The notes beneath the pieces were generated by a model, which searched no databases, was not told where the DNA came from, and was given only the letters and a program-made list of their open reading frames with translations. A DNA stretch of 64,000 bases, from IMG/VR virus record IMGVR_UViG_3300025162_000016, positions 186,001 through 250,000 of that record. One strand, given 5' to 3'. This document shows positions 7,860-24,886 of this stretch, one piece after another. Each line of letters opens with the position of its first letter. The first letter of the stretch is position 1. The position numbers and the translations under genes are program-made.

Positions 7860-8759
7860 TCATTTGGGAAGGTTAAACAATCTACCAACCCATTTGAGTA
7901 AAAGCTCTCTTTCTAGATTTAATCTATCGTTAAACATATTGCATCTGTATCCGGTATAATCTCTTACAATATTATAATCTTTAAGAGGACTAGTGTTGTG
8001 ATGTCCTTTGAGTATGTTTGTTACATGGTATTGTGGAATTTTATGATATAATCTAGACCATTGGAGGCAATAATCATCGTGTCCTATTAACAAATCTGGA
8101 CAGTATAAATTATCCGGCATTTGGTCCGATAAGACGGATGCGGGGGATTCGATTGTATTTAATGGTTGTCCGGGTACTACAAAAGGTATAGTTATAATGG
8201 TTGGGTCTCCCCATTTTTCATTAAATGCGTAAAGTGTTTCCAATGAAATTGGATCTGCGAATCGCATAAATCCATCTTTTATATCTTCGTTTTTTATGTT
8301 TTGAATAGAACAATGTTCTATTGGTTCCCATCCTCCCCACATTTTTCTGGCGGCAAATGTTAAAATATATGGGCGAGTTTTACATTGTTTGTCAAATGTT
8401 TCCGATATATAAAAATATTCCAATGGAAGTAAACAATCTGCGTCTCCCCAATAATTGAGTCCATTTTTTATTGAAAACTCTCGTTTAACGCAAGGGGGTC
8501 CAAAAATCGGATCTTTGTCTGTTATATGAACAATCTCACAGTGTTTAACAAAGGGATGACTCATGAAATGAATCCATTGTTCTTCCGGATCATTGATCGG
8601 AGTGTCCATGTAATTTTTTGTTTGTCCGTTTAGAATTAGAATAAATTCGGTAGGGGCGGTTGAATATTTATATGCATTTTCTATAGACGTTAAAGTTTCA
8701 TTAACTACTTTTACGTCTTTCCAAGAAATTTGCATTGTAAATCTATTTTTATTTATCAT
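7860..8759 (-). CDS. putative GT-A glycosyltransferase
   Basis: WGDAD DxD-like motif, GHDD; cluster context. Confidence 0.55.
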   Translation of the reverse strand: MINKNRFTMQISWKDVKVVNETLTSIENAYKYSTAPTEFILILNGQTKNYMDTPINDPEEQWIHFMSHPFVKHCEIVHITDKDPIFGPPCVKREFSIKNGLNYWGDADCLLPLEYFYISETFDKQCKTRPYILTFAARKMWGGWEPIEHCSIQNIKNEDIKDGFMRFADPISLETLYAFNEKWGDPTIITIPFVVPGQPLNTIESPASVLSDQMPDNLYCPDLLIGHDDYCLQWSRLYHKIPQYHVTNILKGHHNTSPLKDYNIVRDYTGYRCNMFNDRLNLERELLLKWVGRLFNLPK

Positions 8760-11208
8760 GAAGTTGTCTTTGTAGTTTGATTTTAGTCATTTGTAAAATG
8801 TTATCCACTGCCGCTTGTCCGAATTTTTCTTTTATTCTAATTAAAAATTTAGGATTTGTATGATACGTTAAAAAGGCGTCATCTCGGAATTTCAATACTT
8901 CTTTATTACTCAAATGGTTGGTATGCATTGGAAACGTTTCATATGCATGAAAGGAAAATCCCAAATAGTCGGTTGGCATCGCATCTCCTTTATCCAGTGC
9001 TTCTTTATAGATTTGGCTTCCCGGTAATGGCATCACTGCATACGCATTCCATCCACGGGTGGCAAGCTCAAGGCTCAAATCCAATGTAGCTTTCATGCTT
9101 TCATAATCATCCCCTATATGTCCGAAAAGATAGTTTCCCAAGACTTCAATATCTGCTTCCTCTATCTTTTTTACTACATCCCGAATATCGACATCTAAGA
9201 ATTTTCCTTTAGAAATTTCCAGACGAATTTTTTGGCTTCCGCTTTCAATTCCGAGACATAACCATCGGAATCCCGCTTTACGAAGAAGTTTCAAAACGCC
9301 GGGGTCTTTGGATACAGTATCGATACGTGAATATGCCCATAAAAGGAGGTCTTTACTGTATTCTTTTTTGGCAAGTCCTTCACAGATAGGCACATAGTAT
9401 TTAGAATTGAGTAAAAACATTTCGTCGCATAAGCGAATAGTGCTAACTCCCATCTCATGGAGTTTATCAAACTGTTTCAATATAAATTCCGGAGACCAAT
9501 ACCGCATACCTTTGTAGTTTGATGCTACACCGATAGGGTCATTATCGTTTCGGTTGATGATATTAATCATGCAATTATGGGTCAAAACGTTGTTTGCATA
9601 AAAATTATTATGAGGTTCGCATTGTAAATTAAACGTTTCAGTATTTTCGTCTATAACTTTTATATCTTCAATTCTAACATAATGGGGGCAGTTTATAGCC
9701 TTTTCTAACATTATTTTTGTATATCTTTTACCCCCAAAACCTCTATCAAAATTAGTTTTTGAGTGACAACTGGCACAAAGAGTTATAAGATTTGAAGTTT
9801 GATTATTATACTTATTATAATCAATGTGGTGAACATCCAATTTTCCGGTCGTTTTTTTACATTCCTGACATGTATTATTATCACGTATTTTAACGGATTT
9901 TCTCACTCGTCTGTTTTTGCTTAGATAATATGGTTTAAATTTTACACATTTTCCACCGTCCCATTTGGGATTTTTTTCTTTTAAAAATCGTTCACTTGCT
10001 TTATCTTGATTTTTTCGTGAATACATCGGATTAGCATCAGATAACATTTTTTCTCGGGCCATTTTAGATGCCATTTCTCGTCCTTTTTCTGTACAAAGAT
10101 GTGGAATTGTTTTACCCGTAATGAATCGTTCTTTGCTTGTTTTGGAAGTTTTAGACCGGGTTTCATTGACAAACATGGGATTATAATGCTTCATTCTGAA
10201 TATATTTTTGTCGTTTGCATCAACTACAAGTATTTTATCTCCTATTTTAAGATTTTCTGCGTTTACCCACGTTCCATCGTTATAAAATGGATGCTCTCCG
10301 GTACATTTCACGATTTTATTATCGGTTAGTTTAATATGATATATTTTTTCGGAACGTAGATTGTTAGACACTATTACAACGGTTTCAGAAATTTCCAATT
10401 TATTTTCATCCCATGCTAAGAGTTTATCTCCGATTTTTACATCTTCGATTTTTTTATTCTTATCATGTGAAAGAGTTATTTTCGTGCCCGCAGATAAACA
10501 GAAATTACACCCAAATTTGCATCCAAATGATGAAAATAATGTAGCATAGGGTGTTCGGAGGTTAGCATCGTAGTTAGCGTGCCACATGGGAGCCCTATAA
10601 AGATCAAAGGGTTTTTCTTTCTTTGGTAACAAGTCCCACGCATAGCCGGGAAGATCAATGTCCATTCGTTCTTGAGGCACAATCTTTCCAGGTGCCGTTA
10701 AAAAAGGCTTTCCGTCTTTTCGAAATCCAATTCCGTTAATTTGTCCCAAGGTTGACGGGTCCGTTGTCGCTTGAATACCGGCGAGTGCCCACAATGCATA
10801 GACGCCTTCGTTAGTTAGAACAATATCAATGCTCGGCTCGTCTTGCAGAGCTTTGATGGGAAGAGCCTGCATATAGGAACCTACGAATATGTTCGGGATT
10901 TTGCAATCACTAGATTTGAGATATTTAGACAATTGTGTCGCCCCATACATACTCACTGTTCCGGCATTTACGTTTTGTCCATAGACAACGAAGCATAACC
11001 ATTTGGGATTTAGTTCTTTGATCCTTTGAAGTCCCTGTTCGTGAGATTGGTTCTCCGCATTCATGTCAAGAATGCCAACCTCATGTCCTACGGAACGACA
11101 CGACTCGGCAAGTAGTAAACCCCAAGTGGGTGGTTCAATAGAAGAATAGGTTGTTTTCAGTTCTTGATAAACCCGGTCATTTGATGGTATTACAAATAAG
11201 ATGTCCAT
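8749..11208 (-). CDS. cobalamin-binding radical SAM enzyme (class B methylase-like) with intein
   Basis: N-terminal B12-binding domain; CKFGCNF|C after splicing gives CxxxCxxC; DEMF, GIESG; start re-placed at MDILFV. Confidence 0.9.
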   Translation of the reverse strand: MDILFVIPSNDRVYQELKTTYSSIEPPTWGLLLAESCRSVGHEVGILDMNAENQSHEQGLQRIKELNPKWLCFVVYGQNVNAGTVSMYGATQLSKYLKSSDCKIPNIFVGSYMQALPIKALQDEPSIDIVLTNEGVYALWALAGIQATTDPSTLGQINGIGFRKDGKPFLTAPGKIVPQERMDIDLPGYAWDLLPKKEKPFDLYRAPMWHANYDANLRTPYATLFSSFGCKFGCNFCLSAGTKITLSHDKNKKIEDVKIGDKLLAWDENKLEISETVVIVSNNLRSEKIYHIKLTDNKIVKCTGEHPFYNDGTWVNAENLKIGDKILVVDANDKNIFRMKHYNPMFVNETRSKTSKTSKERFITGKTIPHLCTEKGREMASKMAREKMLSDANPMYSRKNQDKASERFLKEKNPKWDGGKCVKFKPYYLSKNRRVRKSVKIRDNNTCQECKKTTGKLDVHHIDYNKYNNQTSNLITLCASCHSKTNFDRGFGGKRYTKIMLEKAINCPHYVRIEDIKVIDENTETFNLQCEPHNNFYANNVLTHNCMINIINRNDNDPIGVASNYKGMRYWSPEFILKQFDKLHEMGVSTIRLCDEMFLLNSKYYVPICEGLAKKEYSKDLLLWAYSRIDTVSKDPGVLKLLRKAGFRWLCLGIESGSQKIRLEISKGKFLDVDIRDVVKKIEEADIEVLGNYLFGHIGDDYESMKATLDLSLELATRGWNAYAVMPLPGSQIYKEALDKGDAMPTDYLGFSFHAYETFPMHTNHLSNKEVLKFRDDAFLTYHTNPKFLIRIKEKFGQAAVDNILQMTKIKLQRQLHDK
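9574..10500 (-). mobile_element. intein with HNH homing endonuclease (309 aa)
   Basis: Starts CLSAGT, block B CTGEHPF, ends VLTHN|C; HNH core TCQEC..VHHID..N...NLITLC..CH. Confidence 0.92.
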
Positions 11209-11209
11209 G

Positions 11210-12184
11210 TTAATATGTTTGATTTTGATAAAGAGTAAGGAATTCCGTAATTTTTTCAATTGATAATCCATGTGCATCTAACATTTCATCTCTCGTGCCA
11301 TTTCCTAAAATATAGCCTTCTTCTAGACCAAAGCGTTTGAGTTTACATTGAAGATTTTTATCGGCAATGGTGTCTGCAATAACGGAGGAAAATCCTCCCC
11401 CGTTTAATGTTTGCTCTTCTAATGTTACAACCAACTCAGCGTGTTTTAAATAGTTATCTAGTACAACCGGAATGGGTTTGATTTGAAATACATCAAATAC
11501 GTTACAATCGATTGTTTTAGTAATTTTAAGTGCTCGACTTAATAGATATCCTGAAGTAACCAAACAAATTTTTGTGCGGCATCCTTCGTCTTTCAATGGA
11601 AACACTCCTTGATTGTTTTCCATATCAAATCCATTATACTGTGTTTCGGTGGTGGCATCATATGTTTTTTCATAAAACACATCCAAAGCGGTATCGTATG
11701 CTCGTTCAAGTCTTATATAAATCAATTTTCGGTTTTTATACGTATATTTTACCAATTGTTTGACTGCGGGATTGGTTGCGGGAGAATAAATTTCTATTCC
11801 GCATATGCTTCGCATATACGCCATATCATCTGTCGGATTGTGGGCGGCACCCGCTGGTGCATATCCTAGTCCGACTCCCACTCCTAGAATGGTAATAGGG
11901 TTTTGAGCAATTGCACATGAATATCTAATCTGCTCGAAGCATCGAGCCGACCAGCATGCCATATAATAAACATATACCTTTTTCCCACGGCTAGAGAACC
12001 CTGCCGCTACATTGATGGAGTTCTGTTCTGAAATGCCGGTTGCGAAAAATTGATTTGGAACTTCTTCTCTCCATTTGTCTAACGCCGGTGCTCCCATATC
12101 CGGAGAAATTAGAATTACATCTTTATCCTTTTTAGCTAGAGTTAGAAGCTCCATTAAAAATAAATCTCGTTGGGTAACACTCAT
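11210..12184 (-). CDS. transketolase C-terminal (pyrimidine-binding) subunit
   Basis: GISEQN, EQIR, YIRLER, TLEEQ; ATGA overlap with upstream gene. Confidence 0.9.
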   Translation of the reverse strand: MSVTQRDLFLMELLTLAKKDKDVILISPDMGAPALDKWREEVPNQFFATGISEQNSINVAAGFSSRGKKVYVYYMACWSARCFEQIRYSCAIAQNPITILGVGVGLGYAPAGAAHNPTDDMAYMRSICGIEIYSPATNPAVKQLVKYTYKNRKLIYIRLERAYDTALDVFYEKTYDATTETQYNGFDMENNQGVFPLKDEGCRTKICLVTSGYLLSRALKITKTIDCNVFDVFQIKPIPVVLDNYLKHAELVVTLEEQTLNGGGFSSVIADTIADKNLQCKLKRFGLEEGYILGNGTRDEMLDAHGLSIEKITEFLTLYQNQTY

Positions 12185-12966
12185 GACAGTTCGTCCTTTC
12201 CTTGTTGAATAAGCTCTGATTCTTTGGGAATAATAGTATGATATTGCCATACTCCCTCCATATAACTAACGCCTTTGCCTTTGATGGTGTTGGCTATAAC
12301 TATCTGTGGTTTTTTTGGTTTGTGTGCAAAAATATGTCGTATTTGTCTAAAATTATGACCATCAATTTCTTCTACTTCGTAGCCAAATGCTTTGAACTTT
12401 TCGGGTAGGGGGTTAAGTTTTACCATATCTTCGGTTGCGCCAAGGATACAAAGTTGATTTCGATCCACGATTAGCCGAATGTTATTCAAGTTGTGATGGG
12501 AAATAAACAGTAATGTCTCCCACACTGAGCCTTCATAGAGTTCCCCATCTCCGAGAATCACATAAATGTCTCGGTCTTTATCATATCCTCGTCCAGCAGC
12601 GAACCCAATACCATTTCCGAGTGATCCGCCCACGAATTGACAACCGGGAATTTTGTAATTACAATGCATGGGTAAAATGCCATTTTTTGTTCCATACTTT
12701 GCTAGTTCTTCCATTGGAAAGTATTTCAAATCCGCAAGAATAGGATACATTGTGGGTGCTCCATGTCCTTTACTGAAAACTATCTCATCATTGTCTGGAT
12801 CAAATAATGAGTATGAATCATAAAATAAGGACACTAATATGTCAACGGTTGACAGACAAGTAGCTAAGTGTCCTATTTTTGAACGGGTCTTGAAATCAAA
12901 AATTTCTCGTCGTACCCATTTCGCTTTTTCTCGTAATTCTTTTGAGGATTTTAGGATAGTTTTCAT
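12181..12966 (-). CDS. transketolase N-terminal (TPP-binding) subunit
   Basis: SKGHG, GSLGNG, GDGELYEG...DRN, TIKGKG. Confidence 0.92.
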   Translation of the reverse strand: MKTILKSSKELREKAKWVRREIFDFKTRSKIGHLATCLSTVDILVSLFYDSYSLFDPDNDEIVFSKGHGAPTMYPILADLKYFPMEELAKYGTKNGILPMHCNYKIPGCQFVGGSLGNGIGFAAGRGYDKDRDIYVILGDGELYEGSVWETLLFISHHNLNNIRLIVDRNQLCILGATEDMVKLNPLPEKFKAFGYEVEEIDGHNFRQIRHIFAHKPKKPQIVIANTIKGKGVSYMEGVWQYHTIIPKESELIQQGKDELS

Positions 12967-13496
12967 GTTTTTATTCCCGCATCACGGGCAGACAGAATTG
13001 GATTGTTATTAACTGGCCAAAATACATTGTATTCTGGATCATTCCACATGATATGATATTGGTCTTCTTGTTTAACATAACTGTTTGATAGTTTATAACT
13101 AAATATGCAAGTGTCAGATATACATAGGTGAGCGTTTACACAGCCAGCCGGAACAATTACTTGTTTTCTATTTTTATCGTTCAATTGGAAACTTTCAACC
13201 TTTTTATATGTTTTTGAATCCTTTCTAAGGTCGATGACCACTAACTGAATAATTCCATGGAGACATTGAAGGATTTTCCATGTTTTTGCGTCTCCGTGAA
13301 ACCCTCGTAATACGGTTTGCTGTGAGAATGAAAAAGAATCTACTATAAATGTGGTTTTCGGAAGCCCAAATTCATTGAAAATTCTATCATATTCATCCTG
13401 ATAGAACGTTTCAACGTTTTCGCCCCGAAAATCGTAGAAAACATCTGGCTCTATTGTCAGGAGTTTGTCTATTTTTTGGCTTTGGGTGATGTTCAT
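12963..13496 (-). CDS. rmlC: dTDP-4-dehydrorhamnose 3,5-epimerase family
   Basis: DFRG, VLRGFH, DLRKDSKTY, WNDP...WP, LSARD. Confidence 0.9.
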   Translation of the reverse strand: MNITQSQKIDKLLTIEPDVFYDFRGENVETFYQDEYDRIFNEFGLPKTTFIVDSFSFSQQTVLRGFHGDAKTWKILQCLHGIIQLVVIDLRKDSKTYKKVESFQLNDKNRKQVIVPAGCVNAHLCISDTCIFSYKLSNSYVKQEDQYHIMWNDPEYNVFWPVNNNPILSARDAGIKT

Positions 13497-14443
13497 ATTC
13501 CTACAAATGGACCATTAGAATATTTAAGAATAGGACACGCCATTAATACTTCATGAATAGCATCGTCCAGAGAAAAAGCTGGTTTCCATCCTAATGATTC
13601 TAGTTTCTCATTGGAAACGATGTAATTTCTCTGATCTGGATCTTTGTTAATCTGCGATTCGGTTATAAAAAAGTCCGGCACTTGTTTTTTTATTGCTAAA
13701 CACAGTTCCATTTTATTTATATTGCAACGGGAATCTCCTACATTATAAATCTGTCCTCGCATCTTTTTGATTGTTATTGCAAAATGAATGGCGGTTGCAA
13801 CTTCCCGAATGTGAATGAAGTTGCGTAAAAAATTAGATTCAAACAGCACTATAAATTTATCGTTATAGGCTCTCCATATAAAATCATTGACTAAAAGATC
13901 CAATCTCATTTTACGAGAAACTCCCATAACGGTAGCCAATCGCAATGAAATGTTGTTTCCCTTTTCCATAATAGCTTTTTCTGCCGCACATTTAGTTATA
14001 CCATATGATGATATAGGATTGAGTGGGGTTTTTTCCGTACAATGAACGGGGGCTCCTTCTATTTGCTCTCCTGTCCCATATCCGGAATTTGTGGTGACAC
14101 ACACAATTAATTGGTCTTTGCTGGATATATTCGCAAGAAATTCGGCACTTTCTTGATTTACTTGTTTTGTTTCGAACGGAAATCGATTGCACATTGGCAT
14201 ACCAACAATTGCGGCTAAGTTTATAATAATATCTGCATTAATAATAGCCTTTTTATATTGCTCTTTGTCTCGAACATCTCCGTAAATGAAATTGAAGTTT
14301 GGGCGACTACATTGTTCGATAATACCATGTTGGCGGTGTATTAGATTATCATATACGGTAACTCTATATCCTAGATTTAAAAGATAATCTGTAAGGACGC
14401 ATCCGATATATCCTGCTCCTCCAGTTAATAGAATTCTATTCAT
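13493..14443 (-). CDS. NAD-dependent nucleotide-sugar epimerase/dehydratase
   Basis: TGGAGYIG, YGITK, LRLATV. Confidence 0.92.
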   Translation of the reverse strand: MNRILLTGGAGYIGCVLTDYLLNLGYRVTVYDNLIHRQHGIIEQCSRPNFNFIYGDVRDKEQYKKAIINADIIINLAAIVGMPMCNRFPFETKQVNQESAEFLANISSKDQLIVCVTTNSGYGTGEQIEGAPVHCTEKTPLNPISSYGITKCAAEKAIMEKGNNISLRLATVMGVSRKMRLDLLVNDFIWRAYNDKFIVLFESNFLRNFIHIREVATAIHFAITIKKMRGQIYNVGDSRCNINKMELCLAIKKQVPDFFITESQINKDPDQRNYIVSNEKLESLGWKPAFSLDDAIHEVLMACPILKYSNGPFVGI

Positions 14444-14864
14444 ATGTGTTTGCTAATAATTTCGATGAACTATACACTTTTGGTAAAGGAATTGCAACAT
14501 ATTTTATTTTATTATCTCGACACGTTTTAATCTCCGCCGATTCTATATTTTTTCCTATTCTATCTCCACTATTGAAGAAAAGCAAGTCGTCATCTAGATA
14601 GATTTTACGAAGAAATAACAGTGTCTGGCACACGGTTCTATCCGTGTCTATAGAAATTTTTACCGTATTTACGTCTCGCAGATGACTCATTATGAATGCT
14701 CGATGGTCTTGATCCATGAATGGTTTAGACCCTTTGAGTTTTACTTGTAAATCATTATTGACGATAACGGTTAAATGATCGCAGAGAAGTCGTGATGCGA
14801 CAATATATTCGATGTGTCCTCGGTGAAGAGGTGAAAAATAACCCGAAACAATTCCTCTTCTCAT
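14436..14864 (-). CDS. cytidylyl/adenylyltransferase (HxGH family, RfaE/TagD-like)
   Basis: SGYFSPLHRGH, GDR, SSSKL. Confidence 0.88.
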   Translation of the reverse strand: MRRGIVSGYFSPLHRGHIEYIVASRLLCDHLTVIVNNDLQVKLKGSKPFMDQDHRAFIMSHLRDVNTVKISIDTDRTVCQTLLFLRKIYLDDDLLFFNSGDRIGKNIESAEIKTCRDNKIKYVAIPLPKVYSSSKLLANTYE

Positions 14865-14866
14865 AT

Positions 14867-15835
14867 TTATATATTTGTTTCCGCATGAATGACCGATGTT
14901 CCCTCATTTTCAAATTTAAAATCTAGTATGGAATCATTGAATTTGTCATAAAGTATTTTTTTAGTAATTGAGTTGCAAATTACAAGAATAAACCCACATC
15001 CTCCAGCGCCGAGCAGTTTCCAACCATACGCCCCGGTTCCTTTAATCTCTTCGATGATTTGATTTATTTTGTGGGTGCTGATGAGTGGAGATATTTGCTG
15101 TTTTTCTTCCCATGCCATTTTAAGCAATTTTCCGATTTGTTCAATATTTTCACTTAGGAAAAATTGATACGCCTCCCTTGCTATTTCCAATATAGCTTTT
15201 TTGTCTCGATTTTCATGAGATTTAGCAATAGTGTTTTGTTCTCTCTGATCATTTGTATAAATGAGAAGCATCGATTCTTGCAGTTCATTTTTGAATTCTT
15301 TAGTAATCGGTAAGGGCTTTACAAAAAATTTTCCATCTTTATGAATTTCAATAGTATTAAATCCTCCATACATTGGCCAAATTTGATCTTGAATACCACC
15401 GGGTTCGTTTAATAGATACCTTTCAATAAAGATGGCTTCATCCACCAATGCTTTTTTCGAGATTTCTGGGGTTTTAAATATTTTATCTAGTAAATGAAGC
15501 ATGCCGATACAAAATGAGGATGAACCACCTAATCCGGTTCGTGCGGGTATATCTGAGAAAGAAAAAAATTCAATGGCGGTATTGATTTTACGGTGTTTTA
15601 AAACTTCTCGAATTAAAGGATTTTGAATTTCATCCCAAATTTTAACACGTTGTAATTGTGAATAAGTAATAACACTCTCTCTGGACATGATAGAAGGTCG
15701 TTTCCTCATTGAAAGATACACATGTTTATCTATGGTTGTTCCGATAAGAAAGGAACCGTGATTTTCGTAGAAATCTTTATAATCCGTAGATCCCCCAAAA
15801 AGAGATATTCTAAATGGTGATTTTACTATGATCAT
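14867..15835 (-). CDS. hddA: GHMP sugar kinase, HddA-like (heptose 7-phosphate 1-kinase)
   Basis: SPFRISLFGGSTD, GLGGSSS, GGIQDQ, KLLGAGGCG. Confidence 0.85.
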   Translation of the reverse strand: MIIVKSPFRISLFGGSTDYKDFYENHGSFLIGTTIDKHVYLSMRKRPSIMSRESVITYSQLQRVKIWDEIQNPLIREVLKHRKINTAIEFFSFSDIPARTGLGGSSSFCIGMLHLLDKIFKTPEISKKALVDEAIFIERYLLNEPGGIQDQIWPMYGGFNTIEIHKDGKFFVKPLPITKEFKNELQESMLLIYTNDQREQNTIAKSHENRDKKAILEIAREAYQFFLSENIEQIGKLLKMAWEEKQQISPLISTHKINQIIEEIKGTGAYGWKLLGAGGCGFILVICNSITKKILYDKFNDSILDFKFENEGTSVIHAETNI

Positions 15836-17004
15836 ATTGCATTGAGTAATTGTGTCAGCCAAATGATATTTTTAATTTCCAATTCGGGATAGTTTCCGAT
15901 ATACCATCCGAAGAAATGACAATGATCGCAATTAGGGAATTTTTCGGCATAATGTGTTCCATATCGGCGGGTCAAATATGGTTGTCGAAGTTGATTCCCT
16001 CCCCCAGACATCCCCCTGCGAAATTCTACTTCATTCTCACGAAGAACCTTTTCTACTTGATTTCTGAGTAGTATGTCTTTATCTTTTAACATAAGCGTAA
16101 ACGCATAGTTACTATTTCCTTCCAAATTAAAATCCGTGACATATCGGGTTGGATTAAGATTGTTTAGGAAGGTGGCAATATTTTCACGTCTTTTTGCATT
16201 GTTTTCATCTAATCGAGGAAGTTGGTTTAATGCTAGAACCGCATTAATTTCGGTGGAACGAAAGTTATAGGCATCTTGCATAAAAATGAAATCCGGATTC
16301 AAATCCGGAAGACTTTTAATAGTATCACTTTTTAGTATCGCACTATCTGATTCTCGGAGCATACCATGAGAACGAAGTATTCTCGCTCTTTCATACGTCC
16401 ATTCATTATTAGTGCAAACCATACCTCCTTCAATGGAAGTCATATGATGGGCATAATAAAATGAAAAATTAGACACAGCTCCGAATGTTCCTACCTTTTT
16501 GCCATTGAAAGTTGCACCGGGCGATTCGCATACATCTTCGATGAGGTAAATGTTTTTAGTAGCATCTAATATTTTTTGAGTGAGTCCATTATATCCTAGA
16601 ATATGAGTAAGTAAAACAGCTAAAGTATTTGGGCCAATACATTTTAGAAGTTGATCTTCGTCGAGGGCAAGGGTTTTGGGGTTTATGTCGCAAAAAATAG
16701 GAGTAAGCCCAGCATGAAGAATGGCTGATATATCGGAAACCCAATTAAGGGGAGATACGATAACCTCTCGTCGGTTTTTTCTATCTGCTACTACCTGAAG
16801 TAATGCCAACGTGAGAATGTTTGCTGAACTGCCCGAATTGACAAAAACACTGTATTTTATACCAAGCCATTTGCTCCACGCTTCTTCAAATTCTCTTACT
16901 TTTTTGCTATTAGTAAGAATAGGGAGCGGTCTTTGCGAAAGAAACTTGACGAGAGCGTCGGCATCTCCGTCGGTAATATTATTGGACATTAATGGCCACT
17001 TCAT
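15832..17004 (-). CDS. DegT-family PLP enzyme, ColD/E1-like 3-dehydratase
   Basis: NSGSSAN, EDVCES, FSFYYAHHMTSIEGG (His in place of Schiff-base Lys). Confidence 0.85.
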   Translation of the reverse strand: MKWPLMSNNITDGDADALVKFLSQRPLPILTNSKKVREFEEAWSKWLGIKYSVFVNSGSSANILTLALLQVVADRKNRREVIVSPLNWVSDISAILHAGLTPIFCDINPKTLALDEDQLLKCIGPNTLAVLLTHILGYNGLTQKILDATKNIYLIEDVCESPGATFNGKKVGTFGAVSNFSFYYAHHMTSIEGGMVCTNNEWTYERARILRSHGMLRESDSAILKSDTIKSLPDLNPDFIFMQDAYNFRSTEINAVLALNQLPRLDENNAKRRENIATFLNNLNPTRYVTDFNLEGNSNYAFTLMLKDKDILLRNQVEKVLRENEVEFRRGMSGGGNQLRQPYLTRRYGTHYAEKFPNCDHCHFFGWYIGNYPELEIKNIIWLTQLLNAI

Positions 17005-18094
17005 AGGTAAATCTGTCTCCGTAAATTGTTTTTAGTTTTTCGATCACATTGGAATTATCTCTAATTATTACATTATACCCTCGTCTCGCTAATTCCTCTG
17101 CGAACTGAAGTTTTTGCGATTCTTCAATGATATCGGTGTTTGGTTTATAAGTTACTGATTCTATCAATACCGGTGTGATATTGTTTGTGCATTTGCTTAC
17201 AAACTCATTCACTTGATTAATTAGATGTGTTTGATTGCTTTTATCAGTTGCATAGCTGATATGCGGATAGACGCCATTCTCTTCACAAAACAAACCAAAC
17301 ATTTTATTATCTCGGGGGAAGCATGGTCCTCCAAACCCATACCCATATTTCAAATATTTAGGTCCAACACGAGAATCCGCCCCAATTGCTGAAAGTATTT
17401 TCTCAAAATCTAATCCCATTTTGCTAGCTACATCTCCCACCATATTCGCAAAAGCTATCTTGGTAGTAATATAACAGTTTAGGGCTATTTTAGTGATTTC
17501 TGCTTCTGTTAATCCCATTCTTTTCAAGTGGAAATCGGAATGACACATGTCGTAATAAATCTCCGAAACCAATTTCCCGCTTTCTTGCGAGGTTTCTCCT
17601 ATCAAAATCATATCTGGATTTAATTGATCTTGAATAATAGATCCTTGGGCGATAAACTCAGGATTATAAACCACTTCGTAATTCAGATTTTTTAATCTTT
17701 CATATACTGTTTGACTATACCCCGGTTCGACTGTACTGGATATGACGAGATGTTTTGTATTTGGTTGAACTCCTAAACTCACGAGTCCCGCAACGATTCT
17801 ATCGATGTATTGATGGTCGAATCTCCCTGATTTAAGTGACGGGGTATGAACCACTACAAATAGGATATCATTTTTTAAGGCAGTTTTAATATCCGTCGAT
17901 GCGGTAAATTTTTTACTATGGCGCAGTAGTTCATCAACATCTGGTTCCGGTGATTGGAATGTTTTATCATTGAGTTGACGAACATAGGATTCGATGACAT
18001 CAACACCGATTACTTCATAACCACATTGTTCTAAATTGAGGGCTAAACATAGTCCCAATCGCCCTGCTCCTATAATTGATACACTTTTATTCAT
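16979..18094 (-). CDS. ugd: UDP-glucose/GDP-mannose 6-dehydrogenase
   Basis: IIGAGRLG, SSTV.PG, NPEF, GFGGPCFPRD, YKPNTD. Confidence 0.9.
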   Translation of the reverse strand: MNKSVSIIGAGRLGLCLALNLEQCGYEVIGVDVIESYVRQLNDKTFQSPEPDVDELLRHSKKFTASTDIKTALKNDILFVVVHTPSLKSGRFDHQYIDRIVAGLVSLGVQPNTKHLVISSTVEPGYSQTVYERLKNLNYEVVYNPEFIAQGSIIQDQLNPDMILIGETSQESGKLVSEIYYDMCHSDFHLKRMGLTEAEITKIALNCYITTKIAFANMVGDVASKMGLDFEKILSAIGADSRVGPKYLKYGYGFGGPCFPRDNKMFGLFCEENGVYPHISYATDKSNQTHLINQVNEFVSKCTNNITPVLIESVTYKPNTDIIEESQKLQFAEELARRGYNVIIRDNSNVIEKLKTIYGDRFTYEVAINVQ

Positions 18095-18981
18095 GATTTT
18101 TTCGGAATATTTTCTAAGAATTCCCGTTTATTATCGTACAGCCAATCTACAGTTGTTTTATACCCCTTTGCTCGTTCTAAGTTATCTAATACGGCATCTA
18201 TTTTGGATTCATATAGTTCTTTGGTAAGCGTCGGTAGGATTTTTCCTAGTTCATCTAGGGTTTCAAACCGAACAATTCCAGCCGGATTGAAAAATTTTTC
18301 TAGACATTTACTACCACAAAATACGGGTATAGTTCCTACAACCATCGCATCGGTTACTTGTTCCGAAAACCAATCATCTATATTAGTATTTGGAATAATA
18401 ATAGAAAACCTATAAGGAGCTAACGCTATAATTTTACCCATTCCCGAGGGAAGATATGTGTCTAATATGTTGTTAAAACCACGTCCGAATACTTCAATTT
18501 TATCTCCAAATCTTTCCACCACGTCGTATCGCATTTTATGTCCGGTAATCCATCGTTTTTGAGACACTATAATTGATACGTTACGTTCTTTTTCATAATT
18601 TCCATAATCTTCTGGCGCAATACCTTGTACGCAGAAATAAATCCAATGAAATTTGTCTTTTCCTACCCAGTTTTCTATAAAACGATATGATGTAAAAACG
18701 TAATCAAAATGCTGGTGATTTTTTTCTAGCCATTTATAGGGATGAAACATGTTTGGATCGAACTGTCCAGCATTATCGTAAATAGTAGGGACTTCTTCCA
18801 TCAAAGCTATTTTGATTTTACCGTTATAATTGACATGTTCTGGAAGTCGCTTGTCTTCGAAAATATGAACATCGCCATTCTTATTTCCAGTATACCAATC
18901 CCATGCTTTTTTGGAGGGAGGAACCCAATGCTGAATTCCTTCCCATGTATCCATTCCTGTATGTGCGGTGATTATGTTCAT
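18091..18981 (-). CDS. GT10-like (alpha-1,3-fucosyltransferase-like) protein
   Basis: YRFSI.I.N...DWFSEQ..DA...GTIPVF.G, a degenerate GT10 motif. Confidence 0.7.
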   Translation of the reverse strand: MNIITAHTGMDTWEGIQHWVPPSKKAWDWYTGNKNGDVHIFEDKRLPEHVNYNGKIKIALMEEVPTIYDNAGQFDPNMFHPYKWLEKNHQHFDYVFTSYRFIENWVGKDKFHWIYFCVQGIAPEDYGNYEKERNVSIIVSQKRWITGHKMRYDVVERFGDKIEVFGRGFNNILDTYLPSGMGKIIALAPYRFSIIIPNTNIDDWFSEQVTDAMVVGTIPVFCGSKCLEKFFNPAGIVRFETLDELGKILPTLTKELYESKIDAVLDNLERAKGYKTTVDWLYDNKREFLENIPKKS

Positions 18982-19757
18982 TGTAACTTGGCTGTAATCA
19001 GTAAATGCCATCCCAAATGTTGCTCTAATGCTTTAAACATATCTGTTCCCATTGCTTGAAACCAAGGTTCCATTACATAGTTGTTTTTCTTATATTCCTC
19101 GACAATGTAAGGGAAAATATGTGTTTGTTTAAATCCAGTTATATGAAACCCTTTTAATAAATTTGTAACGGATTCGTAGTCATATGTAAATGCGAATGGG
19201 CATCCGGATTGTGCTTCAAATTGATCGAATCCTGAATCAATCATTATTTTCTTCCAAGAGTTTTGGGCATAAAGCATGATTTTTAATATGGACTCGGAAC
19301 TCATATATTTTCGAAGTTTAGAGACAATTTTCTCGGGTTCGGGAGAATGATGAATAACCCCAAATGAATAGATCAGGTCATAGGTTTTAAGAGGAAGAAA
19401 ATCACTAAGATGTTCTGCGTTTCCGGTGTAAAAATTTCCTTTTAATCCATATATTTCAAATCGTTTTTTAGTTGCTTCCAATGATACTTCTGAAAGTTCA
19501 ACCGCAGTATAATTAGCTCCTGCTCTTGCAAAGTTTACAGCGGTGGTTCCAAGACCACACCCTATTTCTAATACTTCTTTTCCTTTCCATTCCGGAAAAT
19601 TGCTAAAAGATACGATATGAGGTTCAACGAATAACTTTTTTTGTTCCACTTCGTCAAAATATTCTTTTGTATAAAGCGGCTTTTTAGAATGACCTATATT
19701 ACAAGGTCGTCGGTTCCAAAAAGTCTTAACATCATCTATAGTCATAACTGTTTCCAC
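18978..19757 (-). CDS. class I SAM methyltransferase
   Basis: VLEIGCGLG, YDLIYSFGVIHH. Confidence 0.9.
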   Translation of the reverse strand: METVMTIDDVKTFWNRRPCNIGHSKKPLYTKEYFDEVEQKKLFVEPHIVSFSNFPEWKGKEVLEIGCGLGTTAVNFARAGANYTAVELSEVSLEATKKRFEIYGLKGNFYTGNAEHLSDFLPLKTYDLIYSFGVIHHSPEPEKIVSKLRKYMSSESILKIMLYAQNSWKKIMIDSGFDQFEAQSGCPFAFTYDYESVTNLLKGFHITGFKQTHIFPYIVEEYKKNNYVMEPWFQAMGTDMFKALEQHLGWHLLITAKLQ

Positions 19758-21301
19758 TCGGGCAAAAGTAACTCGTTTATATTAAATCCGTGTTCTGTCA
19801 ATTTGGGTCCGAACCATAAGGATGGCGCATAAACTTGTTTGTCTGTTCTGTTATTTAAGTATGCTCCCCACCATCCAAAAGTGCTGTTGGAAATTATTAT
19901 ATTTTGACATAATGCCATCATATATAGTTCTAAATAATCCCGTTCCACTCCTTGACAAGAATCGAAATCACATGGCACGTCAAACTTGAGGTTTTGACGG
20001 CACCAAGGCATATCGTCAGAGAAAACGACAATTCGAGTAGGTTTAGCCTGATCAACGGCGGAATAAATATATTCCAGAGTCGGAACGGGGTGATATCCTA
20101 TACAACGAGCTTCTAACGCATCCCCACGCCTTACTTGAACCGCAGTGGCGTCTTTTAGCCACCCGAAACGTTCATGTAATTCTTTTTGTATTTCTTTTGT
20201 TGGTCCAAATAAGGATTGAAGGTATTCCCGGTGATGGTCGAAATATTTCCACGATTGAAAATGCCCTCGTAGTTTAATATTGGGTTCAAATGGGATTGGT
20301 TTATAATACATACTCTCCCAGATATATGTTGTGTTTACCGGAGGGTTATTATCTGTAGCGACTCGGATAAATACGTTATTTAAATAGTTGTGAATGTTTC
20401 TTCCTTGATTTGGTAAAATATGCTCACTTGGATTTACTAATAATTGGGCGTTGTTGTCTTTTGCTAATGCAGCAGCGGCAGCAACCTCAAACATTTGATT
20501 TCCGAGACCCCCGGCCAATACAGGATTTACAGTAACCAGTTCGGGATATTTAGGACGGCTACGAACTTCAATTTCTTGGATTTGACCCACATTATTGATT
20601 TTATTTTCAGTATATCCCCTGCTTCCTCCGTTTCCAGCAGAATAGTTCAAAATATATACCGGCTGATCTATTCTGAAAATCTTTTCGGGTGGGCACATTT
20701 CCAAACAGGGATACATTGTCATTAAATCTTCAATCATTATGTATTGATTGGTTTCTTTAGATGTCCAATCTTCTTTCTTTATCTTATTCCATAAAAATCC
20801 CCGATAAGTTCGGAAATGGGAATATCTCCACATATCCCGACGGTAAAGTTTATTTTGTTTTACGTCAGGGGGGGCTTCGGTGTTTTGTGGAAATGGTTCC
20901 GAGAAGGAAGTGTCTGTATCCCATACTGCCATTCCGCCATATGTAATCCAGCAATTGGTTTTATTGTAAACTTCGTTTAGATAATTTATTACCTCATCGT
21001 TTCCTAAGAAGTCATCCCCATCTAATATGCAAACAATGTCATTATCTCGTATAGTTTCATATTCGGATAGACGTTCGAGAAACCATGTTTTCATGTGCCG
21101 CTCGGGAGTTCCAAACAGATGAATACGGCTATCTTTGTCTGCATGTGTTTTAGCTAATTCATATGTTTTATCGGCGGAACCTGCATTGTAATAAACGACG
21201 ATCCAATTGTCGTGAGTTTGGCATATGACAGATTCTAGGTTTTGTTGAACCCATTTTTCATTGTTATAGCTACAAATTAAGATGACAAATCGATTTTCCA
21301 T
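19742..21301 (-). CDS. GT2-GT11 (alpha-1,2-fucosyl/colitosyltransferase-like) fusion
   Basis: GT2 LDGDD; GT11 GGLGNQMF, VRRGD, SNSTFGWWGAYL. Confidence 0.88.
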   Translation of the reverse strand: MENRFVILICSYNNEKWVQQNLESVICQTHDNWIVVYYNAGSADKTYELAKTHADKDSRIHLFGTPERHMKTWFLERLSEYETIRDNDIVCILDGDDFLGNDEVINYLNEVYNKTNCWITYGGMAVWDTDTSFSEPFPQNTEAPPDVKQNKLYRRDMWRYSHFRTYRGFLWNKIKKEDWTSKETNQYIMIEDLMTMYPCLEMCPPEKIFRIDQPVYILNYSAGNGGSRGYTENKINNVGQIQEIEVRSRPKYPELVTVNPVLAGGLGNQMFEVAAAAALAKDNNAQLLVNPSEHILPNQGRNIHNYLNNVFIRVATDNNPPVNTTYIWESMYYKPIPFEPNIKLRGHFQSWKYFDHHREYLQSLFGPTKEIQKELHERFGWLKDATAVQVRRGDALEARCIGYHPVPTLEYIYSAVDQAKPTRIVVFSDDMPWCRQNLKFDVPCDFDSCQGVERDYLELYMMALCQNIIISNSTFGWWGAYLNNRTDKQVYAPSLWFGPKLTEHGFNINELLLPEWKQL

Positions 21302-21308
21302 ACTATGC

Positions 21309-21614
21309 TTATTGCCCCATTGACTTATCGTAAGATGCTTCAGCTTTTGTATAATACGGCAAATTAAATTTGGCTCTGACTGTGGTTTCTATACTATCTC
21401 TCCATTTTATCAAATCCGATGATGAAAGTGTATCGGTTGATACGAATGAATTATATTTTCCCGGCACCCCATTATAATAGTCTGATATTTTAGTATAATC
21501 CAAATCTGCGGTGTGTAATTTTAACATGGCTCCTATTTTTAGGATACCAAGATTCACGACCACCCTTTCGTCTAATAAAAACGGGGATGGCGGTATAATT
21601 AATGCTATTTTCAT
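21309..21614 (-). pseudogene. internally deleted B12-radical SAM remnant
   Basis: B12-domain start MKIALIIPPSPFLLDER..LGIL.I joined directly to a radical-SAM-like C-terminal tail; no CxxxCxxC. Confidence 0.6.
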
Positions 21615-22201
21615 GAATTGTTTATTGGAGTAATTGCGGTATATCGGGTAAACCATGTAATAGAACCAGAAACAAACTGAACATCTTTCACTAAATCCGA
21701 TACTGCTTTGATTACTCCGCTGTGCCTTCCCTTAAAATAATCTTTTTCTATGTATTCGGGGTAATAGTCTGAACCATCGTAATCATGTCCTGCGAGAATA
21801 CCTCCCGGTTTAATTTTAGGAGCCCATGCAATAATATCTTTATAGACGGAAGAATATCGATGATCGGCATCGAGATATACAATATCAAGAGTTTTATCAG
21901 AAACTAAGTCTGCCATTTCCCAGCTTGTTCCATTTAGGAATATAGTTCTCGGATATTGTTTAAGTATATCAATAATGATGTTTTTTACTTTCGATTCAAC
22001 TCCTTCAAATCCCGGTCCACCGGACAAATCGTCTACTAGAATACCCACTCCATTATTGTCATGTACAATAGGTAACCAACTTTTTGCAGTATCTCCAAAT
22101 CCAATACCGATTTCAGCTACAATCATTCCTTCTGATTGGTTATCCTGAACCAGATTAAAAAGTTCCGTTGAGAGTATTGGCTTTTCGGTTTTTTCTTTCA
22201 T
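21611..22201 (-). CDS. SAM methyltransferase (Methyltransf_24-like)
   Basis: AEIGIGFG, VYLDADH.Y, PGGILAGHDY. Confidence 0.88.
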   Translation of the reverse strand: MKEKTEKPILSTELFNLVQDNQSEGMIVAEIGIGFGDTAKSWLPIVHDNNGVGILVDDLSGGPGFEGVESKVKNIIIDILKQYPRTIFLNGTSWEMADLVSDKTLDIVYLDADHRYSSVYKDIIAWAPKIKPGGILAGHDYDGSDYYPEYIEKDYFKGRHSGVIKAVSDLVKDVQFVSGSITWFTRYTAITPINNS

Positions 22202-22275
22202 AATTTATATAAGCTGAAATCCAAGGGGTTTATTTAAGTTATCTTTCCTTTCGTTGTAAATTGTGTTTTCATAAA

Positions 22276-23898: not shown

Positions 23899-24884
23899 AC
23901 TAATTGAATATCACTATACATCTTATTTTGCCAAATGTCAAGATTATAATATGTTTTATAAAAATGTTTGGCATTGGTTGAGCACCTTTCATAAAAACCA
24001 GTAGGTTCTTTTAAACGTCGTGCTAATTGACGAGCACCGTTGACATCCTCTGCTTCTACCGATAATTCGGGGAAACATTTCCGTTGGGTATCCACTCTAA
24101 TATTACCTATACACGGAATTCCAAAATAAGCGCAATTGAGACTAAAAGTACCTGCGGCTACAGTAGGCATTAGATGAACTGCATATTTGAATGTGGATAA
24201 CATTTTAATCCATTCGACCCATGTCAACCTTGGTATTACATATAAATTAGGAACCTGCTCTTCCCCCGGTTGAGTACAATGTGATGTATGAACATGAATG
24301 GGGCAATCAAATTCATTGGCTACTAAATAACTCTGAAATCCTCCATACCAACGACACATTCCACCGCCTATTATTGCTCTATTTTCAGGAGAGGGTATAA
24401 TTGATTGTATTGAATCTTCTATCATTAACGTTGGTATGGTGGAGACACATTTACCTGGAAACAATCCTTTGTACCAATTAGTGTCATATTCATTATGCGC
24501 AAAAATAATATCGACCTCTGCAATAGTATTATAAAAGTTAAATTGATCCGATATTGACATGTCGTTTACATACGAAGTTGGACCTTCTTGAATAAATGCT
24601 ACTTTTTTATTTTGTTTTTTAATATCTTCTACAAATGACATCGCATAAAGTTGAGAAAATCTATTTGGAATGTTATTCAATTTAATTCCCTCGACATTTA
24701 ATGATACTCCGCCTTTGGGCAGAATAAGCATAACCCAATCATATCCTGAAACTTGAGAATAGTTCATGATATTAAAGTGATCGGCATTAAGGGCAAACAT
24801 CCATGCCATCTCTGCTCGCATATTAGGATGGTTTATTGGGACTTTCCCAGTCCATCCCATTTCAGTTAAAAAACAAATTCGCAT
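23895..24884 (-). CDS. putative GT-B glycosyltransferase
   Basis: AAGTFSLNCAYFGIPCIG resembles GT-B nucleotide-binding helix; cluster context. Confidence 0.6.
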   Translation of the reverse strand: MRICFLTEMGWTGKVPINHPNMRAEMAWMFALNADHFNIMNYSQVSGYDWVMLILPKGGVSLNVEGIKLNNIPNRFSQLYAMSFVEDIKKQNKKVAFIQEGPTSYVNDMSISDQFNFYNTIAEVDIIFAHNEYDTNWYKGLFPGKCVSTIPTLMIEDSIQSIIPSPENRAIIGGGMCRWYGGFQSYLVANEFDCPIHVHTSHCTQPGEEQVPNLYVIPRLTWVEWIKMLSTFKYAVHLMPTVAAGTFSLNCAYFGIPCIGNIRVDTQRKCFPELSVEAEDVNGARQLARRLKEPTGFYERCSTNAKHFYKTYYNLDIWQNKMYSDIQLV

Positions 24885-24886
24885 GT

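What the first reader, a model, noticed from the sequence alone, without database searches (positions are those of the whole stretch)
8749..14864. Split transketolase, B12 radical SAM, RmlC and epimerase: branched or higher-carbon sugar module
Seen: tightly coupled genes. Known: TPP enzymes add two-carbon branches to NDP-4-keto sugars (YerE, yersiniose), and class B radical SAM enzymes methylate unactivated carbons. Inference: this makes a chain-extended, C-methylated sugar rather than serving pentose-phosphate metabolism. With HddA and the nucleotidyltransferase, NDP-heptose supply is an alternative.
Basis: inference. Interest (0 to 1): 0.6.

Follow-up and report, generated by a model that had tools for sequence, protein, structure and literature searches.

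The report
Phage heptose-branching sugar gene module
A 369-kb freshwater phage carries a tightly packed gene set, shared with hundreds of bacteria and other phages, that most likely activates a seven-carbon sugar and remodels it with a thiamine enzyme and a radical enzyme into an unusual, still uncharacterised sugar.

Summary
The genes are real and translationally coupled on the minus strand. They form one conserved module, not pentose-phosphate genes. The window lies in a 368,758-bp phage genome with terminal repeats.

The module encodes:
- an HddA-like kinase and a small nucleotidyltransferase;
- an SDR whose best solved relative is 6VO6 (2e-94), which I recall as the GDP-heptose C4-dehydrogenase Cj1427;
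- an epimerase closest to GDP-4-keto-heptose 3-epimerases;
- a neighbouring "DegT" gene that is really a ColD-type 3-dehydratase (His replaces the catalytic Lys);
- the split transketolase;
- a radical SAM enzyme with a B12-type N-terminal domain.

In loci with 8 kb on both sides of the radical SAM gene, 82 of 85 carry a thiamine enzyme. It is either this transketolase type or an E1-type pair. The module transketolases form their own clade and all lack two acceptor-binding residues. So the substrate is most likely NDP-heptose, not a 6-deoxyhexose, and the thiamine enzyme most likely adds two carbons to a 3-deoxy-4-keto-heptose.

C-methylation is unproven, because the closest solved relative of the radical enzyme is the diol dehydratase AprD4.

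A near-identical intein-free allele occurs in another metagenome.

The parts
14867..15862 (-). GHMP kinase, HddA-like (heptose phosphate kinase type)
   Evidence: Pfam GHMP_kinases_N and _C. The best NCBIfam hit is HddA at 130 bits, below the equivalog cut-off. The best solved relatives are heptose-7-phosphate kinases 4USM, 4N3O and 3K85. In related phage loci a PfkB kinase takes its place.
14436..14864 (-). Small nucleotidyltransferase (cytidylyltransferase fold, HldE/RfaE domain II-like)
   Evidence: PF01467. TIGR02199 rfaE_dom_II scores 45.7 bits, below its cut-off. The best solved relative is 3GLV, 'LPS core biosynthesis protein'. Cellular loci use an HddC-type NTP_transferase instead.
13493..14443 (-). 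SDR, probable NDP-heptose C4-dehydrogenase (Cj1427-like)
   Evidence: PDB 6VO6/6VO8 at E 2e-94, 319 bits, against 58 bits or less for dTDP-glucose 4,6-dehydratase and 4-epimerases. That 6VO6 is Cj1427 is from my memory. The chemistry of Cj1427 is described in PMC10680097.
12963..13496 (-). RmlC-fold C3 (or C3/C5) epimerase of a 4-keto-heptose nucleotide
   Evidence: PF00908. The rmlC equivalog scores 122.9 bits, below its 155.75 cut-off. The best solved relatives are GDP-D-glycero-4-keto-D-lyxo-heptose 3-epimerases 8DAK and 8DCL.
12181..12966 (-). Split transketolase-type ThDP enzyme, PP-domain subunit
   Evidence: PF00456 and PF13292. Thousands of homologues of 253-260 aa at 57-73% identity. 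It falls in the module clade, apart from housekeeping transketolases.
11210..12184 (-). Split transketolase-type ThDP enzyme, Pyr plus C-terminal subunit (true start 12184)
   Evidence: PF02779 and PF02780. The start was set by alignment and the ATGA overlap. The best solved relative is the split transketolase 6YAJ at 74 bits, barely above DXS at 70 bits. H461 is Gly and D469 is Ala in this protein, and these changes hold across all module members.
8749..11208 (-). Radical SAM enzyme with B12-type domain, as a precursor. Exteins are 10501-11208 and 8749-9573, giving 510 aa after splicing.
   Evidence: Pfam B12-binding and Radical_SAM. Alignment to intein-free homologues of 509-510 aa at 58-80% identity. 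AF2 model of the L002 homologue has pLDDT 91. Foldseek ranks AprD4 first, then TsrM, MgmA, OxsB, CysS and TokK.
9574..10500 (-). HNH-type intein (309 aa) inserted before the third Cys of the CxxxCxxC iron-sulfur motif
   Evidence: Pfam Intein_splicing, PT-HINT and HNH. The sequence reads ...GCKFGCNF|CLSAGT...TGEH...VLTHN|CMINI. It is absent from all 160 homologous loci. A contig in run X7 skips exactly 927 nt here.
15832..17004 (-). ColD-type PMP-dependent 3-dehydratase (DegT family).
   Evidence: The best solved relative is ColD 2GMS at 157 bits. His aligns with ColD His188 and with the catalytic Lys of perosamine synthase. 55 of 59 family members in the loci have this His.
16979..18094 (-). 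NDP-sugar 6-dehydrogenase (accessory, not core)
   Evidence: TIGR03026 scores 245.9 bits, above its cut-off. It is present in L002 and in only 7 of 80 viral loci.
7860..8759 (-). Unknown 299-aa protein, overlapping the radical SAM stop by 11 nt
   Evidence: No Pfam, NCBIfam or PHROG match. No homologue in the fetched loci.
18091..28148 (-). Glycan assembly genes upstream in the same strand run: GT10-like, methyltransferases, GT2+GT11, GT25+DUF268, GT2, and an intein-bearing protein (PHROG family phrog_36001, function unknown; possibly glycosyltransferase-related)
   Evidence: Pfam. Partly syntenic in L002 and L003.

Best explanation
This is a phage-borne copy of a widespread, uncharacterised nucleotide-heptose tailoring module. 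The proposed order of steps is inferred from enzyme families and known chemistry.

1. The HddA-like kinase and the small nucleotidyltransferase activate a heptose. They depend on host GmhA and GmhB, which the phage lacks.
2. The Cj1427-like SDR oxidises C4.
3. The RmlC-fold enzyme epimerises C3 (or C3 and C5).
4. The ColD-type enzyme removes the 3-hydroxyl, giving an NDP-3-deoxy-4-keto-heptose.
5. The split transketolase-type ThDP enzyme adds a two-carbon unit to that carbonyl, giving a C4-branched nine-carbon sugar. This parallels YerE, the two-subunit E1-like alphaKADH2 enzymes, and the split transketolases proposed for miharamycin.
6. The radical SAM enzyme with the B12-type domain, active only after its intein splices out, performs a further radical step. 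This may be C-methylation, or an AprD4-like dehydration or rearrangement.

The neighbouring glycosyltransferases would then build the product into a glycan during infection.

Shown: the gene families, their conservation as a unit, the heptose-type nearest relatives, the His-for-Lys change, the altered transketolase site, and the intein. Inferred: the order of steps, the point of carbon-carbon bond formation, the donor, the nucleotide, and the radical chemistry.
For: Conserved module:
- The same genes surround the radical SAM homologue in phage-like contigs, in 80 bacterial loci of 286 relatives and in 80 viral loci of 194 relatives.
- With 8 kb on both sides, a ThDP enzyme lies within 8 kb in 40 of 40 bacterial and 42 of 45 viral loci. 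Of these, 33 are the transketolase type and 49 the E1 type (E1 identity from Pfam).

Heptose substrate:
- The SDR matches 6VO6 at 2e-94.
- The epimerase's best matches are GDP-4-keto-heptose 3-epimerases.
- The kinase's best matches are heptose-phosphate kinases.
- Methylomonas and SAR11 loci add GmhA-like SIS and HddC-GmhB genes.

3-Dehydratase: His stands at the catalytic Lys position, as in ColD. Cj1427 plus a C3-dehydratase make GDP-D-glycero-3-deoxy-4-keto-heptose in vitro (PMC10680097).

Transketolase specialisation:
- It forms a separate clade (SH-aLRT 96).
- Gly replaces H461 and Ala or Ser replaces D469 in all 31 module members, while the ThDP and catalytic residues are kept.

No second SDR that could reduce C4 lies in this phage's module. 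That fits C4 being consumed by addition.

Precedents for ThDP branching of 3-deoxy-4-keto sugars: PMC9306805 and PMC12247030.
Against: - No enzyme was assayed and no product is known for any carrier.
- The transketolase keeps both phosphate-binding arginines (R358; R520 in 25 of 31), so a sugar-phosphate substrate is not excluded.
- The phage nucleotidyltransferase is of the ADP-heptose (HldE domain II) fold, whereas the tailoring enzymes resemble GDP-sugar enzymes.
- The phage lacks GmhA and GmhB.
- The radical enzyme's nearest relatives are not methylases, so its role is open.
- An AprD4-like product could instead supply an aldehyde acceptor elsewhere on the sugar.
- The identity of 6VO6 as Cj1427 rests on my memory, not on a tool result.
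- Housekeeping split transketolases were thinly sampled in the tree (two, of unknown context).
Confidence: 0.5

Rival explanations
1. Chain extension rather than branching. The radical SAM enzyme acts like AprD4 on the C6-C7 diol of the heptose side chain and makes an aldehyde or ketone. The ThDP enzyme then extends the chain by two carbons to a linear nonose. The C4-oxidation, epimerisation and 3-dehydration steps tailor the ring separately.
For: AprD4, a sugar 1,2-diol dehydratase, is the closest solved relative by sequence and by fold (TM 0.71-0.74). The SDR resembles a C4-dehydrogenase rather than a 4,6-dehydratase, so the C6-C7 diol would persist. Transketolase and DXS-type enzymes normally prefer aldehyde acceptors (established knowledge).
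Against: Similarity to AprD4 is low (16% identity, 52 bits), and cobalamin-dependent methylases follow closely in the fold ranking. A 4-keto group left unreduced would need a C4-reductase, which this phage's module lacks. Known E1-type sugar enzymes act on ring ketones (PMC12247030).
Confidence: 0.2
2. The split transketolase is an ordinary transketolase that boosts sedoheptulose-7-phosphate supply for NDP-heptose synthesis.
For: All ThDP-binding and catalytic residues, R358 and usually R520, are kept. The pathway does start from a heptose.
Against: In 49 of 82 well-flanked loci that carry a thiamine enzyme, the same position is filled by E1-type 2-oxoacid enzymes, which cannot make sedoheptulose-7-phosphate. 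Carriers such as Methylomonas already have two full-length transketolases. The module clade is separate. H461 and D469 are lost in all members. The phage lacks the GmhA needed to use sedoheptulose-7-phosphate.
Confidence: 0.1
3. One reading: a two-carbon branch and a C-methyl group are put on an NDP-4-keto-6-deoxyhexose, like yersiniose but on a hexose.
For: RmlC-fold and SDR enzymes occur in 6-deoxyhexose pathways. YerE provides the chemical precedent (PMC9306805).
Against: The SDR scores 319 bits to 6VO6 against 58 bits to dTDP-glucose 4,6-dehydratase. The epimerase and kinase are closest to heptose enzymes. Cellular loci carry GmhA and HddC-GmhB. No glucose-1-phosphate nucleotidyltransferase lies in the module.
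Confidence: 0.05

Closest known systems
Campylobacter jejuni capsular GDP-heptose modification pathway (HddA, Cj1427 C4-dehydrogenase, C3 and C3/C5 epimerases, PLP-dependent C3-dehydratase; PMC10680097)
   Same: The same enzyme families are the best matches for the kinase, SDR, epimerase and dehydratase. The predicted intermediate, NDP-D-glycero-3-deoxy-4-keto-heptose, has been made in vitro with the Campylobacter enzymes.
   Different: The Campylobacter pathways end with a C4-reductase and have no ThDP or radical SAM enzyme. Here there is no C4-reductase in the module, but a ThDP enzyme and a radical SAM enzyme are always present. The phage uses a cytidylyltransferase-fold nucleotidyltransferase instead of HddC.
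ThDP-dependent branching of NDP-deoxy-keto sugars: YerE and ErwE (decarboxylase superfamily), two-subunit alphaKADH2 (aldgamycin, kibdelomycin), and split-gene transketolases proposed for miharamycin and amipurimycin (PMC9306805, PMC12247030)
   Same: A 3-dehydratase makes a 3-deoxy-4-keto sugar next to a ThDP enzyme. The enzymes are two-subunit transketolase-type or E1-type, as in the antibiotic clusters.
   Different: - The known split-transketolase candidates number 13, all from Streptomyces, and none is characterised. Here there are hundreds of loci in Gram-negative bacteria, SAR11 and phages.
- The substrate is a heptose.
- Many loci use a miniature E1 pair of about 200 plus 180 aa.
- The ThDP enzyme is always paired with a B12-type radical SAM enzyme.
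- It is not a YerE-family protein.
AprD4 (radical SAM 1,2-diol dehydratase of apramycin) and class B cobalamin radical SAM enzymes (TsrM, OxsB, TokK, CysS, MgmA)
   Same: An N-terminal Rossmann B12-type domain plus a radical SAM barrel. The CxxxCxxC motif is present. AprD4 also acts on an amino sugar.
   Different: Only 11-16% identity. No NCBIfam equivalog cut-off is approached; the best is HpnJ at 93 bits against 578. Cofactor and reaction are unknown.
Split transketolase of Carboxydothermus hydrogenoformans (PDB 6YAJ/6YAK)
   Same: The same two-gene architecture, and the best solved match for the C-terminal subunit.
   Different: Only 74 bits, barely above DXS. The acceptor-site His and Asp present in 6YAJ (HAGLTVGEDG) are Gly and Ala here (GVGLGYAPAG).

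Membership tests
Canonical transketolase (EC 2.2.1.1) | ThDP/Mg site (GDG...N), cofactor-activating Glu, and catalytic His26, His66, His261 and His473 | tested here: met
   All are conserved in the window protein. Residue numbers follow E. coli transketolase from memory and were placed through motifs in the Methylomonas full-length transketolase.
Canonical transketolase (EC 2.2.1.1) | Acceptor and phosphate site residues His461 and Asp469 | tested here: not met
   Gly replaces His461 in 31 of 31 module members. Ala or Ser replaces Asp469 in 31 of 31. Every comparison sequence in the alignment keeps both residues: the three full-length transketolases, the two 620-aa forms and L099 (634 aa, labelled DXS-like by me, identity not confirmed).
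Canonical transketolase (EC 2.2.1.1) | Groups with housekeeping transketolases in a tree | tested here: not met
   31 of 32 module N-subunits form one clade (SH-aLRT 96). That clade excludes the full-length transketolases of Methylomonas, Methylobacter and Kuenenia. Only two other split subunits were sampled.
Class B (cobalamin-dependent) radical SAM methyltransferase | CxxxCxxC cluster motif plus an N-terminal B12-type Rossmann domain | tested here: met
   The motif C253-x3-C257-x2-C569 is restored after intein removal. The fold of a homologue matches AprD4, TsrM, OxsB and TokK over both domains.
Class B (cobalamin-dependent) radical SAM methyltransferase | Binds cobalamin and transfers a methyl group | not testable with these tools
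   The nearest relatives (AprD4, HpnJ, BchE) are not methylases. No sequence motif decides this.
RmlC (dTDP-4-dehydrorhamnose 3,5-epimerase) | Reaches the equivalog score TIGR01221 | tested here: not met
   122.9 bits against a cut-off of 155.75. The fold family PF00908 is met. The best solved matches are GDP-4-keto-heptose 3-epimerases.
ColD/E1-type PMP-dependent 3-dehydratase | His in place of the Schiff-base Lys of DegT aminotransferases | tested here: met
   The query FSFYYAHH aligns with ColD FSSFYSHH (His188) and with perosamine synthase FSFFGNK. 55 of 59 relatives have His.
HddA (D-glycero-D-manno-heptose 7-phosphate kinase) | Reaches the equivalog score NF049969 | tested here: not met
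   130 bits against a cut-off of 600. It is still the best family, and the best solved matches are heptose-phosphate kinases.
Cj1427-type GDP-heptose C4-dehydrogenase | Close sequence kinship to the solved enzyme | tested here: inconclusive
   6VO6 at E 2e-94 over the full length. The depositor's title is generic, and the link to Cj1427 is from my memory. The paper is not held.
Intein | Cys1, block B TxxH, terminal HN, +1 Cys; in-frame and absent from orthologues | tested here: met
   Blocks seen directly in the sequence. There is a precise gap in three orthologues. No intein in 160 loci. A natural allele lacks exactly 927 nt.
YerE-type sugar-branching ThDP enzyme | Decarboxylase-superfamily fold (TPP_enzyme_N, _M and _C) in one chain | tested here: not met
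   Pfam finds the transketolase and DXS families only. The resemblance is in the proposed chemistry, not in ancestry.

The most novel reading that the evidence does not exclude
The ThDP enzyme and the AprD4/B12-type radical SAM enzyme together define an undescribed route from NDP-heptose to a sugar of nine or more carbons. The product could be branched, chain-extended or even carbocyclic. It would be common in SAR11 hypervariable regions, methanotrophs, Verrucomicrobia and aquatic phages, and would represent a new monosaccharide class in abundant aquatic microbes and their viruses.
Probability: 0.4. Interest if true: 0.7.

Novelty: new variant of a known kind. Interest (0 to 1): 0.55.

Why it matters
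ThDP-dependent branching of nucleotide sugars is known from a few O-antigens and antibiotics. Split transketolases in that role are so far only proposed, for 13 Streptomyces clusters.

Here the same logic appears on a heptose scaffold. It is obligatorily paired with a radical SAM enzyme, in at least 286 bacterial species genomes and 194 viral contigs. These include SAR11, among the most abundant bacteria in the sea.

The product would be a surface sugar that phages themselves encode, so it probably bears on phage-host recognition.

Cultured carriers (Methylomonas, Methylobacter) make the chemistry directly testable.

The intein in the iron-sulfur motif, with a natural intein-free allele, gives a clean natural pair for studying intein invasion of a phage metabolic gene.

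Tried and rejected
- **Near-identical phage records.** Megablast against phages found none.
- **Literature.** Full-text searches combining transketolase, radical SAM, heptose, cobalamin and O-antigen found no description of the module.
- **Erwiniose as a C-methylated, branched heptose.** Rejected: PMC9306805 shows it is a 3,6-dideoxyhexose joined to a C4 keto acid by ErwE.
- **Bradyrhizose (bicyclic C10 sugar) as the product.** No support. An 8.0-Mb genome of the same order as L066 carries the module. It has no photosynthetic reaction-centre genes and no match to the ORS285 gdh primers. The paper does not list the cluster's genes. This was not tested in a true photosynthetic Bradyrhizobium.
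- **A broken methyltransferase at 5800-6619.** I looked for homology to the methyltransferase that follows the module in L002 and found none.
- **GmhA and GmhB in the phage.** Not found.
- **The paper that would confirm 6VO6 = Cj1427, and the amipurimycin paper.** Neither is held.
- **The large representative-protein search.** Not used, because the word search and the family scans sufficed.

Full report
**Setting**

The window is bases 186001-250000 of a 368,758-bp viral record with direct terminal repeats. Replication genes are of the T4 kind.
- There is a clamp-loader A subunit, a dNMP kinase and a dUTPase.
- The family B polymerase's best phage match is Microcystis phage Mel-JY01, at 40% identity.
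- Five runs from two freshwater or lake metagenome studies hold the stretch in full.
- The finding lies inside a minus-strand run of glycan genes from about 5800 to 28148.

**Observation**

- Two starts need correction. The radical SAM protein begins at 11208, one base after the TK-C stop. TK-C begins at 12184, in an ATGA overlap with the TK-N stop.
- The 842-codon radical SAM ORF is long because it holds a 309-residue intein with an HNH nuclease domain (Pfam).
- The intein is inserted as ...GCKFGCNF | CLSAGT ... VLTHN | CMINI. That is exactly before the third cysteine of the CxxxCxxC cluster motif, and this cysteine also serves as the +1 splice nucleophile.
- Three orthologues of 509-510 residues align without it.
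- None of 160 related loci has it.
- A 356-nt contig from an independent study joins 9570 directly to 10498. It skips 927 nt (309 codons) and has only 2-3 other differences on each side. A near-identical intein-free allele therefore exists in nature.

**The genes form one conserved module**

- The TK-N subunit has thousands of relatives of 253-260 residues at 57-73% identity.
- Around them, phage-like contigs carry the same set: SDR, radical SAM, TK-N, TK-C, RmlC-fold epimerase, DegT-family protein, a kinase and a small cytidylyltransferase-fold enzyme.
- A scan of one genome per species with the radical SAM alignment found 286 relatives. These include many SAR11 single-cell genomes, Methylomonas, Methylobacter, Verrucomicrobia, Kuenenia and Nitrospira.
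- IMG/VR holds 194 more.
- I clustered the neighbouring ORFs and annotated them with Pfam. Loci without the split transketolase carry another two-subunit thiamine enzyme instead. It is either a miniature E1_dh-type alpha of about 200 aa with a Transket_pyr-type beta of about 180 aa, or a full E1 alpha/beta pair.
- Taking only loci with at least 8 kb on both sides of the radical SAM gene, a thiamine enzyme lies within 8 kb in 40 of 40 bacterial and 42 of 45 viral loci. Of these, 33 are the transketolase type and 49 the E1 type.
- Other roles are also filled by unrelated proteins. The kinase is GHMP or PfkB. The nucleotidyltransferase is HddC-type in cells and cytidylyltransferase-fold in phages.
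- Such replacement of one protein by an unrelated one in a fixed context argues that each role is needed by one pathway.

**The substrate is a heptose**

- The SDR matches PDB 6VO6 at 2e-94, against 58 bits or less for hexose 4,6-dehydratases and 4-epimerases. [quoted passage not shown] The tools could not confirm the link.
- The epimerase's best solved relatives are GDP-D-glycero-4-keto-D-lyxo-heptose 3-epimerases.
- The kinase's best solved relatives are heptose-phosphate kinases.
- Methylomonas sp. TEB has the order radical SAM, GHMP kinase, TK-N, TK-C, DegT, HddC-type transferase, GmhA-like SIS protein, SDR, then an ABC-2 exporter gene.
- SAR11 loci carry an HddC-GmhB fusion.
- The phage itself has no GmhA or GmhB, so it must draw on the host.

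**The neighbouring "aminotransferase" is a dehydratase**

- The DegT-family gene at 15832-17004 is closest to ColD.
- It has His where aminotransferases have the Schiff-base Lys. ColD His188 mutant structures mark the position.
- 55 of 59 relatives in the loci share the His.
- In Campylobacter, Cj1427 plus the C3-dehydratase give GDP-D-glycero-3-deoxy-4-keto-heptose in vitro (PMC10680097).
- A 3-deoxy-4-keto sugar is exactly the kind of acceptor used by YerE and ErwE (PMC9306805).

**The transketolase**

- In a tree, 31 of 32 module N-subunits form one clade (SH-aLRT 96). That clade excludes the full-length transketolases of the same Methylomonas, Methylobacter and Kuenenia genomes.
- The cofactor and catalytic residues are kept.
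- The residue equivalent to His461 is Gly in all 31 members compared. Asp469 is Ala or Ser in all 31. Every comparison sequence in the alignment keeps both.
- His100 is kept only in the phage clade.
- R358 is always kept, and R520 usually.
- The acceptor pocket is thus remodelled and widened, while a phosphate or diphosphate contact may remain.
- Replacement by E1-type enzymes argues against a role in making sedoheptulose-7-phosphate.
- A 2025 review lists split-gene transketolases as proposed but untested branching enzymes, known from 13 Streptomyces clusters. It lists two-subunit E1-like enzymes as proven C2-branching enzymes that use pyruvate (PMC12247030).

**The radical SAM enzyme**

- Family scans give only weak hits: HpnJ 93 bits, BchE 86, AprD4 53, PhpK 49. 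All are far below their cut-offs.
- The only solved relatives by sequence are AprD4 and MgmA.
- A confident model of the L002 orthologue (pLDDT 91) matches AprD4 best, followed closely by the cobalamin enzymes TsrM, MgmA, OxsB, CysS and TokK.
- The architecture is therefore class-B-like, but methyl transfer is not established. An AprD4-like dehydration or another radical rearrangement is equally open.

**Reading**

- The best-supported scheme runs in order: heptose activation, C4 oxidation, epimerisation, 3-deoxygenation, two-carbon addition by the thiamine enzyme, a radical tailoring step, then use of the product by the adjacent glycosyltransferases.
- This phage has no second SDR in the module to reduce C4. 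That fits addition at C4.
- The main rival puts the new carbon-carbon bond on the side chain, after an AprD4-like step.
- No product is known for any carrier, and four literature searches combining the key terms found no description of the module.

**Verdict**

- The substrate class needs correcting, and C-methylation is unsupported.
- This is a new, widespread variant of known sugar-branching chemistry, carried by a phage.
- It comes with a newly seen intein insertion in the iron-sulfur motif.

Noticed in passing
window 25539-28148 (-): A second intein, of the LAGLIDADG type (CTLEDT...FVVHN|C), interrupts an 869-aa protein that matches PHROG family phrog_36001 (function unknown). The 880-aa protein at 29839-32481 matches the same family and also a glycosyltransferase PHROG. 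So two genes of this glycan run carry inteins.
   Followed up: partly
window 4441-5751 (-), 36888-38120 (+), 59571-60734 (+): Three IS605-family TnpB/OrfB-like transposase genes lie in the 64-kb window. One directly flanks the glycan run, next to two short methyltransferase-like ORFs (5800-6261 and 6224-6619) that may be remnants.
   Followed up: partly
whole record G000 (window = 186001-250000): The host record is a complete 368,758-bp phage genome with terminal repeats. It has T4-like replication genes, and its polymerase is only 40% identical to the nearest deposited phage (Microcystis phage Mel-JY01). It recurs in lake metagenomes of two studies.
   Followed up: partly
loci L101-L180 against L007-L086: Phage and cellular copies of the module differ systematically. 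Phages use a PfkB or GHMP kinase with a small cytidylyltransferase-fold transferase, nearly always keep the RmlC-fold epimerase, and lack GmhA and GmhB. Cells use a GHMP kinase with an HddC-type transferase, often fused to GmhB, and often carry GmhA.
   Followed up: yes
L021:6676-7813 and relatives: A miniature two-subunit thiamine enzyme: an E1_dh-type PP domain of about 200 aa plus a Transket_pyr-type Pyr domain of about 180 aa, with no third domain. It is the commonest thiamine partner in the module. None of the papers I read mentions it.
   Followed up: partly
G007 (genome of L010): One Rhodospirillaceae MAG carries three paralogues of the radical SAM gene on different contigs, at 870, 664 and 391 bits.
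   Followed up: no
window 22276-23898 (-): A fusion of a GT25 glycosyltransferase with a DUF268 domain. Nearby are GT10-like and GT2+GT11 (fucosyltransferase-type) genes, which hints at a fucosylated or methylated glycan.
   Followed up: no
window 32471-33376 (-): A free-standing homing-endonuclease-like gene lies among the replication genes, adding to the load of selfish elements in this region.
   Followed up: no
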